A stretch of 63,841 bases of DNA, counting the filler, from Octopus bimaculoides (taxonomy: Eukaryota), in assembly GCF_001194135.2 (NCBI RefSeq). It is 6 parts of 6 records of this genome, joined end to end, with 100 filler letters (N's around TTAATTAATTAA, not from the genome) between each part and the next. Parts side by side here need not be neighbours in the genome. Positions count along the whole stretch, not along the records: positions 10,860 to 32,508 come from NC_068990.1; 5 more parts are not named here. One strand, written 5' to 3'. Positions 16,161 through 28,956 of this stretch are shown in pieces. Position 1 is the first letter of the stretch. Each line of letters begins with the position of its first letter. The notes beneath the pieces were generated by a model that saw only the letters and a list, made by a program, of their open reading frames with translations, was not told where the DNA came from and made no database searches. The position numbers and the translations under genes are program-made.

Positions 16161-17499
16161 GATCTTTACGCAGCTCTTTCTCTTTCCAGCTGTCACATCC
16201 TCGATGCTTTACTGAGTGTAGGGTTTTGAAAACCGAGGAGTTGTCTTTGTCTGCTCACAGCTACAATAACACCTAAAACAACTAGCGAAAAACATGGCAA
16301 ATGCTACCACTTTATACTTCTTGCGAGTGATGGCTTAGGTTTTGTTTTACCATGTTTAGAAATAAATACTAGAGTCAATATCATTCACTAAAAATCCTTC
16401 AAGGCGGATCCTCAGCATGACCGGAGTATAGTTGACCGGAACGAGCTAAAGAATAAACTAAGAAGAGGTAATATATTAACCGGAAAGCGTTATAGGACAA
16501 CAGAGTTGAACATGCAGTTTCGTTTCCATTCTCGGCAGAAACCATTCCAGTACTTCATTAGTGTACCTGGGAAATGGATCAACTACACGGACTCTTATTT
16601 CCCGCACCTATAACTCAGAAGGTTTATATCCATGGGGGATATTCATGTCTTGAGGTGGCTCTTAGAATCATATCTTGTTGCAGACGTTACACATATTGTT
16701 CAATTTAGAAGTTGTTCTAGAAATAATCATACTGCCCTTTAGTTCCAGAAATACTGTATTTAAGACATTATTATCCAACGTGTACTTCCAATTTGTAAAA
16801 TAGTAAGTTGTAATTTAGGGAGATTTAGCTACTATTTAAAGCAGGTAAGTTGCCGAGGAGCTGGAATTGTGACATCGTGTTTTAAGCGAACGAAATCAAC
16901 ATCCTGTTTCCTTTATACGTTTGAAGAACATCACTGCCTCCCTTGAGAGAGGACTTTTGAACAGCACAATGTCCCAATCCGCTAGTCTGTGGCCCAGAAT
17001 GTGTAAATATGAAAAAAAAATTGATGTTATAATGGTAGGTAGCATCACAGAGTAAGAAGTTATAACTCCAGGCATGGCACAACCGCAAAATGGCTTCAGT
17101 TTTTGTTATTTCATTTCATATATTTTATTGAAGCCGCTAATGCTCTTGGGAAAGCATATACATCACGGCATTTTATTTTCTCATTCTTAAAATATAGGGA
17201 TTTCTTCCACTGGCAAAATACCACACCATTTTTAGAATAGAGATAAAGACGCTTTAATCAGTATCGATACTTATGTTATCGATACTGGGAGGATATAAAA
17301 CAAAGTCGACTTCGGTATGATTTGAACTTGGATCATAAAAAGGATCTTTTCTGTTGCTGTCACAGTTTTGAAATTTTAAAATAAAGTGAAAAATTTTCAA
17401 ATTGGGTATATAGATGTAATTTTTCACGCTGAATCTAAGAAATTTTGAAGTTTTAATGAACAAAGTCATGTGAAATGTTGGAACAGGCATGTAAACAAT

Positions 17500-17950
17500 A
17501 TAAAAAGGTAAAAATACCCTCCACAAGTTACTGAAAATTGCGGTTACTGGAAGAACCAACTGACGTATGTATCCTCTACTGTGTCGCGACTCCGAGACAT
17601 GACACGATATAAAGAAAAGCATGCCTGGTTCACAACACACTCCTCCGAAAACCCACTGCTCAGGTAGCAAGCTTCCTTCCTCAGTTTTATTTACGTTTTC
17701 AGAAGAGTGTTTCGTCTATCTCAATAATCTTCCCAGGATCGCCTATCTGAACTGGGTTATAGAGCAGGTCCTCCGCACATGTTTCACAAACATAGCTGTT
17801 GTAATCAGCAGCTGTGCAGTGGCTCGTCCCCAGTTCTTGCAAGTAAGAAACCGCCTCCTCCTCCTCGATTTTCAACTTCTCCATCATATTCGGAAGGTTA
17901 AACGAGATGGCTGCGGTCATTCTTGGTTGGAAAGGTCCAGAAAAATACAT
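17500..17950 (-). mobile_element. Merlin (IS1016/IS1595-like DDE) transposase remnant
   Basis: IGDPGKIIEIDETLF, LLPEQWVFGGVC and VLPVTAIFSNLWR match the Merlin G.G..VEIDES.F / QWVFG / LPGT.I.SD.W motifs; the last catalytic D is changed and stops are present. Confidence 0.8.
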
Positions 17951-18338
17951 GGTTCAAAAATTATGAAAATGAGATAGTGATAGGACAGCACTCGAAAATA
18001 TCTGTTTGTTTCTCAAAAAAAAAAAAAAAATACAGGTGAAAATGACAAAAATGAGGTAGTATAAAAGTTAAGAAAATAGGTGTTTATCAAAGAAAATTGA
18101 CAGGTAAAGACAATACGCGTGATTGTAATAATTTAAGCAAACTTTACCTTAGCTTGTTATTGGGGAATAGACACCTATATATCTGTGGCTTTCGATTGGC
18201 TAAAATTACCCAAAATTTGCAAATTTTAAAAGCTATTAACTTTTTATTTATTAATTTATTGCAAAAATGAATTTCATTTCCATAGTTAGCAAAAAAAATT
18301 ACACCAGTACACCAAATTTGAAACCGATTGGAACAAAA

Positions 18339-19019
18339 TTAAAAGAATTGAAAACTAATAGCAACAGAACGTAACATGGCAGTGTGTCCTACGTTCCACT
18401 GATTTTGCCATTCAGAAGATGAAGTTTCGAGTACGACAGAAGACATAGAAAAGTTACAGTAGGGCTGGATGAAAAAAGGAAGACATATTAAATACCGTAC
18501 CATTCCACAAATGAACTGGTTGCATGTCATTGGATAAGCACCATTTTTCGTCAAAACCTGAAACAAGGGAACTATTCGGCCTGTTTTGTACAGTGACCAG
18601 GAAATGAATTGTAAAGTCAAAGCATGTAACTTATTACTATCCGACAGATACGACTTGACTGTGTTCTGAAAGTCTAAAAGATCTCGTTCTTTTTGCTTCA
18701 TTTTCTTTTTGTTTTTGGTTTTCTTTTTGTCTTCTTTCGTAGATTGTTGTTTTGGAACTTGTGGAACAGTTATTACCTCGACAGTTTCACCTGCTGATTC
18801 TTTTATGTCAAGCGGAAAGACTTTCTTTAAATCCATGTCATATCCCTGGCTGATAAGGTTTTCCTTTGAAACAATTTTCGAGACGTCAATAGAACTTCTA
18901 GGAGTTGAAACAATTTTCGAGTCGTCAATAGAACTTCTAGGAGTTGAAACAATTTTCGAGTCGTCAATGGAACTTCTAGGAGTCGCTTCAGTTCGTACAA
19001 CTTCCAGAAAACCTGCCAT
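18339..19019 (-). CDS. Orphan 226-aa ORF (possible large exon) with 3 x 13-aa repeat and Lys-rich cluster; function unknown
   Basis: Long uninterrupted frame in AT-rich, non-microsatellite DNA; (TPRSSIDDSKIVS)x3; the frame stays open 19 more codons upstream to a TTCTTAG possible acceptor at about 19077; no family recognised. Confidence 0.4.
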   Translation of the reverse strand: MAGFLEVVRTEATPRSSIDDSKIVSTPRSSIDDSKIVSTPRSSIDVSKIVSKENLISQGYDMDLKKVFPLDIKESAGETVEVITVPQVPKQQSTKEDKKKTKNKKKMKQKERDLLDFQNTVKSYLSDSNKLHALTLQFISWSLYKTGRIVPLFQVLTKNGAYPMTCNQFICGMVRYLICLPFFIQPYCNFSMSSVVLETSSSEWQNQWNVGHTAMLRSVAISFQFF

Positions 19020-19735
19020 CGTCTGGTTTTGTGTGTATATAAGAACCTGTTCTCTTTTTCTTTCCCAGGTTAGAACCTAAGAATATCCGTGTGTGCGTGT
19101 GTGTGTGTGTGTGATATATGTCTGTAAAGATCTCGAAATACAAAAGTCTGCTGATTATTAATTAATTTTCTAAAAGGAAGCAAGATGTTCTAATTTTCAA
19201 GTGGTGCATGAAGGGATCCTCCACAAGTTACATCAATGAACTTCAAAAGTTACCAAAGAAATAGCACGAAATTACTAGTGTTGCTGCAACAACAAGTAGT
19301 AGTTGTTAATTATGAGAATAAAGCGTCGTTGAATATATTAGCAATCTCAAAAAGAGAAATCTTATGACGTCATAAATACATTAAAAAAATTTTTGTATAA
19401 AGAAAAAAGAAAGAAAGAAAGAAAGAAGTGAAATGAATTGATGTCAACTCATTAATCCTGATTACATACCAATCTACCTCACAGATATTTGTTGCACTTC
19501 GACGTAGAACACATAATTCTAGACATGTTGGTACGTTTCTGACTCACACACTCTATATCCAAAGGTTAGTAGCGTCCACTAACCAGCGATGGCAGGTACA
19601 CAGGAAACACAGGAAAAATATTGGACACATGGATATTCGTAAAGACAAAAAAGACAACAGAGCAGTCAATTATGAAGGCTTTACTTCAGCATGGACTTGA
19701 TCGGGATTCTGAAAAAAACTAAACAAGAAAGAACT

Positions 19736-20010
<275 letters not shown>

Positions 20011-20029
20011 TGCACTGTTCCGTTATGTT

Positions 20030-21215
20030 AAGATCAATAAAAAAGTACTCCATCTGGTGAGAGATAAATATTATTTAATAAGCACAATATGTTTTTATGT
20101 GCTACTATTAGTTTCATGTGCTGAGAACATGCCAAACAGTGTTTTATAACGCGTCTGGTGTCCCAGCATAACCATCAGACACTGCCCACATGGCATAAGG
20201 AACTAAAATGGGACGAGAGAAAAGGCGAGAACGAAGTATTTATAAAAGGTGGAAGGTTGAAGCAACAACCTCAACAACAGAAGCAGTTGTTGGAATTGCA
20301 GAAGCAACAGCAACTGTCAATGCAACTGCTATTCAACAAAACAGAAAATACATCATGTTCGTTCACCCCCGATACGGTCGCAAACTCCAGCGGAGAATTC
20401 GCATATAATTCAGATGAGGGTACTACCTTTCCTGCTTACTTTAAAAGGTATGAGAAAATGTTTAAAGACGAAAAATAAACCCGACTTTTGTCGAGAAAGC
20501 TGGCACGAGCAAGAAAAATATCAAAGAGACCGGGTGAAGTCTGTTTTGAAAGAACTGTTGCTATTCTATCAAAAGTTTTCAGCGAGAAAAGCTCTTTATT
20601 TAATACGTGTTGGCAATGCATGAACATTACAAAAAAGAGGACGCTGCAATCGTTAGTATAGAATGCGAGAGATTTGGGATCTTTCTGATTTGGCGGGCGC
20701 CACTTTTTATTTATGTTTTATTTAATGTGTTTTCTACCGAAACACTTTAAAATTTCGTATACTTGTATATTTTATCTTCTAGAACAGAGAAAAAATTTTT
20801 ATATTCGAACTTATTTCATGTTAAAAGTTGTCGTATTTCGGTAATTTCAACCAATCACTGACGTCTATTGACGTGAAAACAATTACTGCTGTGGAATGTA
20901 AACAAGACGTTCTAGCGGTGTAATGGGATCTTTTCCCTTGAATAAAATTAGTGCCGTTGTTTGTCAACAACAACTATCGGCGGTACTGTTATTTATAACA
21001 TCTTTCGTGCGTTTGTACCGGTTTTAGCTTTAGGGTTTTAGGGTTAGGGTTTTAGAGTTAGGGTTAGGGTTTTATGGTTAGGGTTATGGTTATGGTTTGG
21101 CAAAAATACTCATAACCCTAACCCTAACCTTAACGAATTGTTCGCCAGATATGGTATTCTTGATACCATTGTATCTGATAATGGAACTCAGGTTACTGCC
21201 TCCAAGTATAGATGG
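20030..21215 (+). mobile_element. Gypsy/Ty3 LTR retrotransposon remnant (possible LTR end, gag, integrase fragment), interrupted by another repeat at about 20660-21135
   Basis: NSSGEFAYNSDEGTTFPAYFKRYEKMF and TRLLSRKL...SKVFSEKSSLFN are typical invertebrate Gypsy gag; LFARYGILDTIVSDNGTQVT at 21138 is an integrase core motif. Confidence 0.75.
21024..21133. repeat. Interstitial telomere-like TTAGGG/TTTTAGGG repeats switching to CCCTAA orientation
   Basis: TTAGGGTTTTAGGGTTAGGG... to about 21097, then TAACCCTAACCCTAACC at 21113-21129. Confidence 0.85.
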
Positions 21216-22112: not shown

Positions 22113-22540
22113 ATAGGCGTAGGAGCGGCTGTGTGGTAAGTAGCTAGCTTACCAACCACATGGTCCCGGGTTCAGTCCTACTGCGTGGCATCTTGGGCAA
22201 GTGTCTTCTACTATAGCCTCGGGCCGACCAAAGCCTTGTGAGTGGATTTGGTAGACGGAAACTGAAAGAAGCCCGTCGTATATATGTACATATATATATA
22301 TATATTTGTATGTGTGTGTATATGTTTGTATGTGTGTGTTTGTCCCCCCCCCCAACATCGCTTGACAACTGATGCTGGTGTGTTTATGTCTCCGTAACTT
22401 AGCGGTTCGGCAAAAGAGATCGATAAAATAAGTACTAGGCTTCTAAAGAATAAGTCCTGGGGTCGATTTGCTCGACTAAAGGCGGTGCTCCAGCATGGCC
22501 ACAGTCAAAAAGACTGAAACAAGTAAAAGAATAAAAGAAT
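22113..22540 (+). mobile_element. Full-length tRNA-derived SINE with CORE-like domain, internal microsatellite and (AAAGAAT)n tail
   Basis: GGCTGTGTGGTAAG head, GGGTTCAGTCC B box, TTGGGCAAGTGTCTTCT core, tail GACTGAAACAAGTAAAAGAATAAAAGAATA. Confidence 0.9.
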
Positions 22541-24072: not shown

Positions 24073-26930
24073 ATGATTAGTATGGTGTGTAGCATCATCA
24101 CCAGCGGCCTGGTAGTCAATCATCGGTCTTGCTTTATGACTACGAAGATGACTCATAAGCCCAGCTTTACTGAGGCACGGTCTTGCACAGACACTGCATG
24201 TCAGTGTCATAGGAAGACCCTTGCCATCTGGAAGTGCAACAACAATGCCCTTCCTGACATCCCTCCTTAATTTCTCATGTACAATTCGTGATTTCTCAAA
24301 AGTAGTTGTCCCCTCATGCACAATCCTTCTCCACCTGTCACGGTCAATAGCTATACCTTCCCATGTGTTAGGAGAGATGTTGGCATCTCTCAAGGAAACC
24401 TTCAGTAAGTCTTTATATCTCGTTTTGGTTTATATGGAGGTCGTTCTCCTTTAGTTAACTCTCCATAAAAGAGTTGTTTTGGCATCCTTGAATCTTTCAT
24501 CCTGACCAGATGACCACTCCATCTGAGCCTTTGCTTCAACATAAGAACTTCTATACTTTCACACCGAGAGCTTTCCAATATCTCAAGATCACTGATGCGG
24601 TCCTCCCACTTAATGCCATAAATCCGTCTGAGATACATCTGATGCAAACGTTTCAGTTGTTTCAGGCGGTATCGATATGTTACCCAGGTCTCGCAGGCAT
24701 AAAGAAGAGAAGAGAGTACACACGCCTTGTACACCTTTATCTTTGTCTTCTTGCATATGTCTCGCCGACCCCAGAGACGCCTTTCTAGCCTTCCGAAAGT
24801 ATCACTTGCTTTCCTAATTTTGTATGGAATTTCATTATCCAAATTGCCATATCTATTAACAGTGCTTCCCAAGTAGACAAACTGATCGACTACACCAAGT
24901 CTTTTACCATACACATAGATATTTGGTTCAATATACTGCTTACCAGGGACAGGTTGGTACATGACAACAGTTTTCTTGAGATTGACTGTCATTCCTAAGG
25001 CAGTGCAAGCATCAGNNNNNNNNNNAATGTGGTGCATATCAATCTCTGTGTGCGCTACTAAATCACAAACATCTGCATACAAAAGGTCTCTTATGATAGA
25101 GGTAAATACCTTTGTTTTTGCAGCAAAGCGCCTGATATTAAATATGCTGCCAGAGGTTCGATAATGGATGTAAACACCATATCTACAATTTCTGAATGCA
25201 ATACAGAAAACCATCGCAAAATATATGGCGAATAGTGTCGGTGCCAGAACATCCCCTTGCTTCACTCCATTTTGTATTGAGATGGGCTCCGACATTTTAC
25301 CTCTAGCATTAACCCTACCCTTCATGTCTTCGTAAAAAGACCTAACCACAGCAACGAACTTTTCAGGACAACCAAGTTTCTGGAGGACTTTCCATAGTGC
25401 TTTTCTATTAACTGTATCAAAGGCCTTTGACAGATCGACAAAAACCTGATATAAATCGAGACCCTGTTCCACACACTTTTCCTGAAGCTGTCTAGCTGAG
25501 AAGATCACATCAGCAGTGCCGCGTCCCACACGAAAACCAGATTGACTTTCTAGAAGAACATAGTCTGCAACGTATTTCAGCAGACGGTCCAGAAGTACCC
25601 TGCATAAAACCTTTCCTAAGACAAAGCAATGATATTCCCCTATAGTTACCACAATCATTCCTGTTGCCCTTTCCCTTATATAAGACCACCATTACTGTAT
25701 CTCTCCAGTCCTCGGGTACAGATTCACTATCCCATACCCTGCCGAACAAGGAGTGAAGTTGCTGTAGAAGTTTCTCACCACCATGCTGCAACAACTCTGC
25801 ATGAATGCCATCCATACCCGGAGACCTCCCATTATTCATCTTTGAGACAGCCACCGCGACTTCTTCCAACATAGGTGGCTCTGCAAGAGCTGCCCTCACA
25901 GGTAATTCAGGGATGCGATTGAGAACATCCTCACTAACTATAGACTGCTGATTCAAGAGTTCATCAAAGTGTTCTTGCCACCTTTGCAGAATTCCTTGTG
26001 AATCACGAAGAAGTTCTTTACCATTCCTGCTTCGAAGTGGTGTCATCAGAGAAGAAGTTGGTCCATAAAACTCTCGCAAGAGACCATATAGCAGCTTTGT
26101 GTTATTGGAATCCGATGCCGCCTGTATCTCATCAGCCTTCTTACTCCACCAGGTATCCCTCACACGTGATTTCACATCCTTGAGTTCCCTATGCAATACA
26201 TCTCTCTCCTGTGGCTTTGCTGACAAATAGCGCAACAAAGTACGTCTTTTAACAGCCAATAAATCATCTATATGTTCATCATTTTCTTTAAACCAATCTT
26301 GATGCTTTCTTTGTATCAATCCCAGAACTTTCCTGCCTATATCATAAACTGATTTTTTGAGGGTCGACCAATCTTCCCCAAAATCTGCAACATTCATTTC
26401 CTCTCGTAAAGTTCTCTTCACGCCATTACAACTAAGACGAGCAACATTCAGTCTTTTAGGCAGGGCAATACCTGCAGCCCGGATTTTACGTTTTGTGATT
26501 AATTTGACTTTTGCACGTACCAGGCGGTGGTCAGTCCAACACTCAGCTCCACGAAGAACACGAACACACCGCACATCACGTCTGTCACGCATCCTAACAA
26601 GGATGTAATCCAGAATATGCCATTCTTTAGATGCAGAATGCATCCATGTGGTCTTAAACTTATTCTTTTGCTGAAACATGGTATTGGTAACACACAGACG
26701 CAGCTCCTCACACATCTGCAGTAGAAGCATACCATTACTATTACACTTTCCCACCCCATGCTTTCCAATTACTGTCCATGTGTTAAAATCCCTACCCACT
26801 CTAGCATTAAAGTCACCCAGTACGATGACTTTATCTGCCCGAGGGATATTTCTTATAATGCCCTTCAAAGCATGGCAGAAAGAAACTTTTTCGTCATTAG
26901 TAGAGCACATAGTTGGAGCATACACACTCA
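24073..26930 (-). mobile_element. 5'-truncated RTE-clade LINE (partial APE, RT, C-terminal C2H2 finger), frameshifted
   Basis: APE motifs SVYAPT, VLGDFNARVG, HILDYILVR, TDHRLV; RT motifs NYRGISLL, QSGFR, FVDLSKAFD, GVKQGDVLAPTLF, LYADV (YADD mutated); CSVCARPCLSKAGLMSHLRSH; frameshifts near 25630 and 24400. Confidence 0.97.
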
Positions 26931-26932
26931 CA

Positions 26933-26963
<31 letters not shown>

Positions 26964-26972
26964 CACACACAC

Positions 26973-28747: not shown

Positions 28748-28935
28748 ATAGGTGCAGTTGTGGCTGAGTCGTAAGAAGCTTGCTTCCCAATCACATGGTT
28801 CCATGTTCAGTCCCACTGCGTGGCACCTTGGGCAAGTGTCTTCTACTATAGCCTCAGGCCGACCAAAGCCTTGTCAGTGGATCTGGTAGGCAGAAACTGG
28901 AAGAAGCCCGTCGTGTGTGTGTGTGTGTGTTTGTT
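28748..28935 (+). mobile_element. SINE 5' half (same family as 22113); its 3' tail is at 30135-30215, beyond the TIR element
   Basis: GGCACCTTGGGCAAGTGTCTTCTACTATAGCC core; tail CGACTAAAGGCGG...GACTGAAACAAGTAAAAGAATAAAAGAATA. Confidence 0.8.
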
Positions 28936-28956
28936 TGTTCCTGAGGTTAATTAGAA

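What the first reader, a model, noticed from the sequence alone, without database searches (positions are those of the whole stretch)
18339..19077. Orphan 226-aa ORF with a frame-preserving 39-bp triple repeat and Lys-rich patch
Seen: the only long non-TE, non-microsatellite ORF in the window. Three near-perfect 39-bp units (18867-18905, 18906-18944, 18945-18983) encode TPRSSIDDSKIVS, followed by KEDKKKTKNKKKMKQKERD (NLS-like) and a more ordered-looking C-terminal half. The frame extends upstream to TTCTTAG|GTT, and internal sites (TGTTTCAG| about 18560, |GTACGG about 18500) allow alternative splicing. Inference: an exon of a lineage-specific nuclear/phospho-repeat protein, or an accessory ORF of an unrecognised mobile element (it lies about 390 bp upstream of the Merlin relic on the same strand).
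Basis: partly seen in the sequence, partly recalled or inferred. Interest (0 to 1): 0.7.

Follow-up and report, generated by a model that had tools for sequence, protein, structure and literature searches.

The report
Orphan ORF with recent in-frame triplication
A 226-codon reading frame with a recently tripled 39-base unit is real and is kept open in one related species, but it has no other relatives, no recognisable domain and no sign of amino-acid-level selection, so it is at best a young lineage-specific gene candidate.

Summary
On the minus strand an ATG-to-TAA frame of 226 codons (19019 to 18339) contains three 39-bp units at 97% identity and a Lys-rich patch.

It is longer than any open frame in 300 composition-matched simulations. 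One relative exists: a 171-aa ORF on a 1.6-kb Logan contig that is colinear with window 19912-18237. That copy has the same ATG, one repeat unit and an earlier stop.

Evidence is mixed.
- **For coding:** the frame stays open despite 110 substitutions (P about 0.01). All ORF indels are multiples of three, against 2 of 17 in the flanks.
- **Against coding:** dN/dS is about 0.73, substitutions fall evenly on the three codon positions, and amino-acid conservation equals neutral expectation. Non-coding flanks are as conserved as the C-terminal half.
- **No identity:** nothing turned up in Pfam, NCBIfam, PDB or Rfam, and the structure model is poor.

The upstream coding extension and the 18560 acceptor are not conserved. 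The ORF lies beside a confirmed IS1595/Merlin-type transposase relic, not inside it.

Best reading: a young, lineage-restricted intronless gene candidate with a recent slippage triplication. Interest is low to moderate.

The parts
18339..19019 (-). ORF, 226 aa, ATG to TAA. The ATG sits in an A(-3)/G(+4) context that is conserved in the relative.
18866..18983 (-). Three tandem 39-bp units (13 codons each). The relative has a single copy, so this is a recent lineage-specific triplication.
18681..18737 (-). Lys-rich, NLS-like patch (aa 95-113). The relative keeps a basic K/R cluster here, but with a different sequence and a 15-bp length difference.
18399..18683 (-). C-terminal conserved segment (aa 113-207), 87.6% DNA identity to the relative. 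It is moderately hydrophobic, has 4 Cys, and substitutions are spread 11/12/12 over the codon positions.
18339..18398 (-). 19-codon tail present only in the window. The relative stops here (TAG where the window has TGG). The last 11 codons lie in arm R of the inverted repeat.
19077..19079 (-). In-frame TAG that closes the frame upstream.
19115..19619 (-). Upstream non-coding block, about 86% identical to the relative. It contains a perfectly conserved CRE-like palindrome, TTATGACGTCATAA, at 19375-19362.
18243..18260 (-). Two AATAAA signals, 80-95 nt after the stop and conserved in the relative. All three relative contigs end 3 nt after the second signal.
18290..18372 (-). Arm R of an approximately 80-nt inverted repeat. 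Its partner is 17348-17430.
17348..17430 (+). Arm L of the inverted repeat.
17500..17950 (-). Decayed IS1595/Merlin-type transposase fragment: N-terminal part only, with one frameshift and stops.
19737..19956 (.). SINE-like interspersed repeat, with other copies at 22127-22343 and 28761-28938. It is present at the same place in the relative, which argues that the two loci are orthologous.

Best explanation
This is a lineage-restricted, intronless open reading frame: a young 'orphan' gene or proto-gene.

**Shown**
- The ORF runs from the conserved ATG at 19019 to the stop at 18339.
- It sits in a roughly 1.4-kb block shared at 86-88% DNA identity with one related species.
- The 39-bp triple repeat is a recent, window-lineage-specific triplication of a unit that is single-copy in the relative.
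- The frame has been kept open in both lineages, while the residues themselves show no detectable constraint.

**Inferred**
- If translated, the product is a small basic protein (pI about 9.3). It would have a fast-evolving, probably disordered N-terminal half, a K/R cluster that could act as a nuclear localisation signal, and a more hydrophobic Cys-containing C-terminal 95 residues.
- The triplication arose by replication slippage or unequal exchange. It is tolerated because 39 bp is 13 codons.
- Transcription would start in the conserved upstream block and end at AATAAA signals lying just inside a neighbouring transposon-derived segment.
For: - **Length:** the frame is 245 codons stop to stop, against a maximum of 203 in 300 simulations.
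- **One colinear relative:** P0001/L001 has the same ATG in the same Kozak-like context and an in-frame stop just upstream, which marks the ATG as the start.
- **Frame retention:** with the observed 110 substitutions placed at random, the frame stays open in only about 1% of trials.
- **Indels:** the ORF indels are 78, 12, 15 and 3 bp, all multiples of 3. In the flanks only 2 of 17 are, which is Fisher P about 0.009 on my own count.
- **Frame uniqueness:** the other five frames carry 6-16 stops in both species.
- **Weak coding-like composition:** the N-terminal half shows three-base periodicity (p = 0.0025).
- **Other conserved features:** the AATAAA signals and a basic cluster are kept in both species.
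- **Copy number in the relative:** only one sequence variant was found across three sequencing runs.
- **Age of the triplication:** repeat units differ by 1-2 bases, while the two species differ by 12-31%, so the triplication post-dates the split.
Against: - **No purifying selection seen:** dN/dS is 0.73 overall (0.71 N-terminal, 0.73 C-terminal) and is not distinguishable from 1. Differences by codon position are 41/36/37.
- **Neutral-looking protein divergence:** BLOSUM score and identity between the two proteins equal those of neutral nucleotide simulations.
- **Flanks equally conserved:** non-coding flanks are as conserved as the C-terminal half, at 11-13% non-CpG differences.
- **No periodicity in the C-terminal half** (p = 0.72).
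- **Stop positions differ by 19 codons**.
- **No identity:** there is no domain or structure match, and the AlphaFold model has mean pLDDT 38.
- **No expression data** could be consulted.
- **Thin evidence base:** only one relative is available, so every test rests on a single pairwise comparison.
Confidence: 0.45

Rival explanations
1. This is non-coding DNA whose frame is open by chance. On this reading the locus is a slowly evolving or DNA/RNA-level constrained block, such as a promoter, UTR, lncRNA or regulatory element. The 226-codon frame, lengthened by the in-frame triplication, has no protein function.
For: - Substitutions are spread evenly over the codon positions and dN/dS is near 1.
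- Amino-acid conservation matches neutral simulation.
- Flanks, C-terminal half and 3' block share the same 11-13% divergence, about half that of the adjacent orthologous SINE at 24%. The constraint, if any, is therefore not codon-structured.
- The stop is not conserved.
- There are no homologues or domains.
- In a large genome a few frames of this length arise by chance, and the first-stage scan selected this one for its length.
Against: - The open frame survives 110 substitutions (P about 0.01).
- All ORF indels are multiples of 3, unlike those in the flanks.
- The ATG and its context are conserved, with a stop just upstream in the relative.
- Even without the extra repeat units, the frame exceeds every simulated frame.
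Confidence: 0.33
2. The ORF is a remnant or accessory reading frame of a mobile element. That element could be the adjacent IS1595/Merlin-type element or an uncharacterised clade-specific transposon. The two sequences compared would then be element copies rather than orthologous host loci.
For: - A confirmed Merlin-type transposase relic lies about 390 bp downstream on the same strand.
- The region is dense in transposable elements: SINE, LINE and a gag-like fragment.
- Homology with the relative covers 'UTR-like' flanks as well as the ORF, as it does between transposon copies.
- The protein collection barely contains this clade: the window's own LINE finds nothing above 55% identity. A clade-specific transposon protein would therefore look like an orphan.
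Against: - The ORF has no transposase or other transposon domain, and a profile search of 1.84 billion proteins found no relative.
- The ORF lies outside the approximately 80-nt inverted repeat that brackets the transposase relic.
- Merlin elements are described as carrying a single transposase gene (PMC8101967).
- There are no other copies of the block within the 21.6-kb piece.
- Only one variant appears in three runs of the other species.
- A SINE sits at the same position in both sequences, as expected for orthologous loci.
Confidence: 0.14
3. The ORF is one coding exon of a larger multi-exon host gene. This is the reader's first reading: an acceptor at 19077, with internal alternative sites at about 18560 and 18500.
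For: - The AG at 19078-19077 and the GT at 18500-18499 are both conserved in the relative.
- A T16 tract followed by CAG at 18030-18002 could serve as a downstream acceptor.
Against: - The relative has an in-frame TAA between the putative acceptor and the ATG, so the upstream extension is not coding.
- The acceptor at 18560 is lost in the relative.
- Joining the 18500 donor to the 18002 acceptor in phase 0 reads IFSSAVLSLSHFHNF and then a stop, so no fusion to the transposase relic results.
- The frame already has its own ATG, stop and AATAAA signals.
Confidence: 0.08

Closest known systems
Taxonomically restricted ('orphan') genes and proto-genes (concept from the de novo gene literature; cited from my own knowledge, not tested against a database)
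   Same: It is a short intronless ORF with no homologue outside close relatives and no known domain. Structure is predicted to be disordered or low-confidence, dN/dS is near 1 while the frame is retained, and it sits in transposon-rich sequence.
   Different: There is no expression or translation evidence here. No outgroup is available to show a non-coding ancestral state. Only one orthologue is known.
Merlin / IS1595 superfamily DNA transposons (PMC8101967)
   Same: A fragment of a DDE_Tnp_IS1595-type transposase lies 390 bp downstream on the same strand and is bracketed by an inverted repeat of about 80 nt. Reported Merlin TIRs span 24-462 bp.
   Different: The ORF has no DDE_Tnp_IS1595 similarity and lies outside the bracket. 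The arms do not begin with the conserved GG, and no 8-9 bp target-site duplication is visible. Merlin elements carry a single transposase gene.
Coding minisatellites: in-frame tandem repeat expansions in proteins
   Same: The unit length is a multiple of three. The copies are near-identical (97%), copy number differs between close relatives (3 against 1), and the repeat sits in a low-complexity, probably disordered segment.
   Different: Coding status is itself unproven here. The encoded S/T-P motif is not present in the relative's single unit, so no conserved function of the motif is indicated.

Membership tests
Merlin / IS1595 transposon (ORF as a component) | Protein carries the DDE_Tnp_IS1595 (PF12762) domain | tested here: not met
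   Pfam and NCBIfam scans of the 226-aa ORF gave only noise. The profile search found no transposase relative.
Merlin / IS1595 transposon (ORF as a component) | The ORF lies between the element's terminal inverted repeats | tested here: not met
   The only significant inverted repeat (18372-18290 and 17348-17430; 0 of 300 shuffles reached its score) encloses the transposase relic. It excludes the ORF apart from its last 11 codons.
Merlin / IS1595 transposon (the neighbouring relic) | Transposase homologous to DDE_Tnp_IS1595 proteins | tested here: met
   The stitched relic hits P0124 (precomputed PF12762) at E = 8e-12, and BLASTP gives 35% identity over 93 aa including IDETL and QWVFGGVC. Pfam and NCBIfam do not hit the relic directly.
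Merlin / IS1595 transposon (the neighbouring relic) | TIRs starting with 5'-GG and flanked by 8-9 bp target-site duplications (PMC8101967) | tested here: not met
   The arms start TTTCTGTT, and the flanking 9-mers differ (AAAGGATCT against GCACTCTGT). The arms are old and decayed, so this does not exclude a TIR origin.
Protein-coding gene under purifying selection | dN/dS clearly below 1, with an excess of third-position changes | tested here: not met
   dN/dS is 0.73, codon-position differences are 41/36/37, and BLOSUM score equals neutral simulation.
Protein-coding gene under purifying selection | Reading frame retained between species (no stops, only in-frame indels) | tested here: met
   P(no stop) is about 0.01 by simulation. 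The ORF indels are 78, 12, 15 and 3 bp, against 2 of 17 flank indels that are multiples of 3.
Orphan / de novo gene | No homologue outside a narrow lineage | tested here: met
   There is one hit among 5.8 billion clusters. The exhaustive profile search of 1.84 billion representatives added only a spurious tandem-repeat protein. The caveat is that the collection holds little of this clade.
Orphan / de novo gene | Transcribed and translated | not testable with these tools
   No RNA-seq, Ribo-seq or proteome data are reachable. The library type of SRR11869390, SRR11869391 and SRR11869394 could not be established.
Orphan / de novo gene | Orthologous sequence is non-coding in an outgroup | not testable with these tools
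Classical monopartite NLS | K-K/R-x-K/R cluster | tested here: met
   KKTK and KKMK occur in the window, and KKKRRR in the relative. This is a sequence motif only. The stretch is also simply A/G-rich DNA, and nuclear import was not tested.
Known structured RNA families | Match to an Rfam covariance model or a tRNA | tested here: not met
   There were no Rfam gathering-level matches and no tRNAs across 10860-32508.

The most novel reading that the evidence does not exclude
A genuinely translated young gene that is born beside, and terminated within, a decayed Merlin-type transposon. Its N-terminal half evolves faster than neighbouring neutral DNA (31% against 24% for the orthologous SINE), which would indicate diversifying selection. 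In one lineage it has just tripled a 13-residue S/T-P-containing module. That would be a snapshot of gene birth plus repeat-driven elaboration.
Probability: 0.15. Interest if true: 0.45.

Novelty: new member of a known kind. Interest (0 to 1): 0.25.

Why it matters
If the ORF is translated, it would be a clean example of a lineage-specific gene caught early. It has an open frame maintained across two species without residue-level constraint. It has a three-fold, frame-preserving module expansion that post-dates the species split. Its 3' end and polyadenylation signals are supplied by transposon-derived sequence. Such cases are useful for studying how new genes arise in transposon-rich genomes. 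If it is not translated, it is a caution that long conserved-looking ORFs in AT-rich repeat-dense DNA can owe their 'conservation' to the surrounding DNA rather than to coding. Either way it does not bear on a long-standing open question.

Tried and rejected
- **Domain and structure searches on the ORF.** Pfam and NCBIfam gave only sub-threshold noise (Tub_N, poxvirus I2-L1 and similar). The PDB sequence search gave E above 0.5.
- **Exhaustive profile search.** The second hit, P0002, is a translated tandem repeat matched in 13 stretches, so it is spurious.
- **AlphaFold2 on the two-sequence alignment.** Mean pLDDT was 38 and pTM 0.26. This is too poor for a fold search, so none was run.
- **Structured RNAs.** Rfam and tRNA scans of the piece found nothing.
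- **Exact look-up of the window's ORF in public assemblies.** It is not on record.
- **Identifying the SRR1186939x runs from the literature.** There were no hits.
- **The ORF's C-x4-C segment as a degenerate transposase zinc-finger.** I considered this after reading P0123's N-terminus, but the profile search found no such link.
- **Splicing the 18500 donor to the T16/CAG acceptor at 18002 to fuse with the transposase relic.** The frame stops after 15 codons.
- **Confirming the inverted-repeat arms as Merlin termini with contigs L004 and L005.** Only the transposase core of L005 matches, at 69% over 204 nt.
- **Antisense ORF 18709-19080.** It mirrors the repeat and shrinks to 61 aa in the relative.

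Full report
**1. What is there**

The feature is on the minus strand. An ATG at 19019 opens a 226-codon frame that ends at TAA 18341-18339. The frame is open upstream as far as a TAG at 19079-19077, which makes 245 codons stop to stop.

Tandem Repeats Finder reports 18866-18983 with period 39, 3.0 copies, 97% matches and no indels, and the repeat finder gives the same three units. They encode TPRSSIDDSKIVS, TPRSSIDDSKIVS and TPRSSIDVSKIVS. The Lys-rich stretch KEDKKKTKNKKKMKQKERD is at aa 95-113.

In 300 first-order Markov simulations of the piece, the longest open frame averaged 134 codons and never exceeded 203. The frame is therefore unusual for this piece even without the 26 codons added by the two extra units. 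It is the longest frame in the piece outside the LINE at 24402-26970.

**2. Relatives**

- A word-indexed search of 5.8 billion protein clusters found one hit. This is P0001, 171 aa, 58% identical, and present on three nearly identical Logan contigs from runs SRR11869390, SRR11869391 and SRR11869394.
- A profile of the two proteins, scored against 1.84 billion representatives without any word filter, added only P0002. That hit is a translated tandem repeat and is spurious.
- Pfam, NCBIfam and the PDB sequence search gave nothing above noise.
- AlphaFold2 gave mean pLDDT 38, so no fold search was attempted.
- Rfam and tRNA scans of the whole piece were empty.

One caveat matters. The window's own LINE protein finds nothing better than 55% identity and no cephalopod-named protein. 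The collection therefore barely samples this clade. 'Orphan' here means no relative outside close kin, and it says little about copy number in the source genome.

**3. The relative is a colinear locus, not just a protein**

Contig L001 (1585 bp) aligns over its whole length to window 19912-18237 on the minus strand. The alignment includes a SINE-like repeat at 19737-19956. This repeat has other copies in the piece at 22127-22343 and 28761-28938 and sits at the same position in both sequences. That argues for orthologous loci in two species rather than two transposon copies. None of the three runs yielded the window's version of the protein, which fits a different species.

Differences at non-CpG sites, by segment:

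| Segment | Non-CpG difference |
|---|---|
| SINE | 24% |
| Upstream block 19619-19115 | 13% |
| 5' leader | 15% |
| ORF N-terminal half | 31% |
| ORF C-terminal segment 18683-18399 | 12% |
| Tail plus 3' block | 11% |

**4. Is it coding? Evidence for**

- The ATG and its A(-3)/G(+4) context are conserved.
- I placed the observed 110 substitutions at random, using the flank substitution spectrum and keeping the N- and C-terminal halves separate. The frame stayed open in about 1% of trials.
- The four ORF indels are 78, 12, 15 and 3 bp, whereas only 2 of 17 flank indels are multiples of three. Leaving out the 78-bp repeat change, which is in frame by construction, Fisher's exact P is about 0.009 (my calculation).
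- The other five frames carry 6-16 stops in both species.
- Two AATAAA signals, 80-95 nt after the stop, are conserved.

**5. Is it coding? Evidence against**

- Nei-Gojobori dN/dS is 0.73 overall, 0.71 for the N-terminal half and 0.73 for the C-terminal segment. Differences fall 41/36/37 on codon positions 1/2/3.
- The observed synonymous count (28.5 of 114) is about one standard deviation from the neutral expectation (my calculation). The transition bias (62 of 110) pushes the true ratio closer to 1.
- Conditional on no stops, neutral nucleotide simulations reproduce the observed BLOSUM62 score and amino-acid identity in both halves. The fraction of simulations reaching the observed value was 0.23-0.79.
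- The C-terminal 'ordered-looking' half is no more conserved than the non-coding flanks and shows no three-base compositional periodicity (p = 0.72). The N-terminal half shows some (p = 0.0025), and the LINE control is strongly periodic (p = 8e-8).
- The stop is not conserved. The relative has TAG where the window has TGG at codon 208.

In summary, the frame is kept but the residues are not detectably constrained.

**6. The repeat**

The relative has one unit, ALADSIDKLNVVS, flanked by the same residues as in the window. The window's three units differ from each other by 1-2 bases in 39, far less than the 12-31% divergence between the species. The triplication is therefore recent and specific to the window's lineage.

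The mechanism (replication slippage or unequal exchange) is inferred. Because the unit is 13 codons, frame preservation carries no information. The T-P site is absent from the relative's unit, so a conserved 'phospho-repeat' role is not supported. The basic cluster is retained in character (KVKKKRRRNK), but it is also simply purine-rich DNA.

**7. Splice-site suggestions**

- The AG at 19078-19077 is conserved, but it leads into sequence that is closed by a stop in the relative.
- The acceptor near 18560 is CAT in the relative.
- The GT at 18500-18499 is conserved (GTACGG in the window, GTATGG in the relative).
- Joining that donor in phase 0 to the good-looking acceptor after the T16 tract (AG at 18003-18002) reads 15 codons and then a stop. 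No fusion to the downstream transposase relic results.

**8. Relation to the Merlin relic**

The minus-strand translation of 17950-17500 reads ...VQIGDPGKIIEIDETLF, then a frameshift, then ...LPEQWVFGGVCCEPG...SNLW. Pfam and NCBIfam do not recognise it. A search with the stitched fragment does find two relatives:

- P0124, which carries PF12762 (DDE_Tnp_IS1595), at E = 8e-12 and 35% identity.
- P0123, at 53% identity.

An inverted repeat of about 80 nt brackets it. One arm reads 18372 down to 18290 on the minus strand and the other is 17348-17430 on the plus strand. Identity is 63-71%, and no shuffle out of 300 reached the observed score. The ORF lies outside this bracket except for its last 11 codons. 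The AATAAA signals lie just inside it.

The arms do not start with GG, and no 8-9 bp target-site duplication is visible. Both are defining Merlin features (PMC8101967), so calling the arms Merlin TIRs is unproven. Merlin elements are described as having a single transposase gene. With no homology between the ORF and any transposase-bearing protein, an 'accessory ORF of Merlin' is unlikely. A clade-specific unknown transposon cannot be excluded with these databases.

**9. Verdict**

Probabilities for the competing readings:

| Reading | Probability |
|---|---|
| Young, lineage-restricted, intronless gene candidate or proto-gene, with selection for an open frame but not for residues, and a recent slippage triplication | about 0.45 |
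| Non-coding, DNA-level conserved block with a chance ORF | about 0.33 |
| Transposon remnant | about 0.14 |
| Exon of a larger gene | about 0.08 |

Everything rests on one pairwise comparison, and more orthologues and expression data would settle it. The unexplained point is that the N-terminal half diverges faster than the flanks and faster than the orthologous SINE at all codon positions. Interest is low to moderate.

Noticed in passing
window 18290-18372 and 17348-17430: An inverted repeat of about 80 nt (63-71% identity, 0 of 300 shuffles reach its score) brackets the transposase relic. Its outer end overlaps the last 11 codons of the ORF. No terminal GG or target-site duplication was found.
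   Followed up: partly
window 17500-17950 (-): An IS1595/Merlin-type transposase fragment (N-terminal part, with a frameshift and stops). Pfam and NCBIfam miss it, but a homology search confirms it (P0124 with PF12762, E = 8e-12).
   Followed up: yes
window 19362-19375: A perfect CRE/ATF-like palindrome, TTATGACGTCATAA, lies about 350 nt upstream of the ATG inside a 24-nt stretch that is 100% conserved in the relative. It is a possible promoter element.
   Followed up: no
window 19737-19956, 22127-22343, 28761-28938: A SINE-like interspersed repeat family (about 80% identity between copies) adjoining a long (GT)n tract at 19890-20011. No tRNA-like structure was detected by ARAGORN.
   Followed up: partly
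window 18684-19019 against L001 898-1140: The N-terminal half of the ORF differs at 31% of non-CpG sites. That is more than the orthologous SINE (24%) and the flanking blocks (11-13%), and it holds at all three codon positions. This is unexplained.
   Followed up: partly
L001 end (equivalent to window 18237): All three independent Logan contigs end at the same base, 18 nt after the first AATAAA and 3 nt after the second. This could be a poly(A) site if the runs are RNA-seq, or a repeat boundary if they are genomic. The library type is unknown.
   Followed up: partly
window 20158-20478 (+): A 106-aa ORF with a weak DUF7083 (retrotransposon gag-like) match (E = 0.002), probably an LTR-retrotransposon relic.
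   Followed up: no
window 24402-26970 (-): A LINE with endonuclease and reverse-transcriptase ORFs, interrupted by assembly gaps. Its best database relative is only 55% identical, which shows how poorly this clade is represented in the protein collection.
   Followed up: partly
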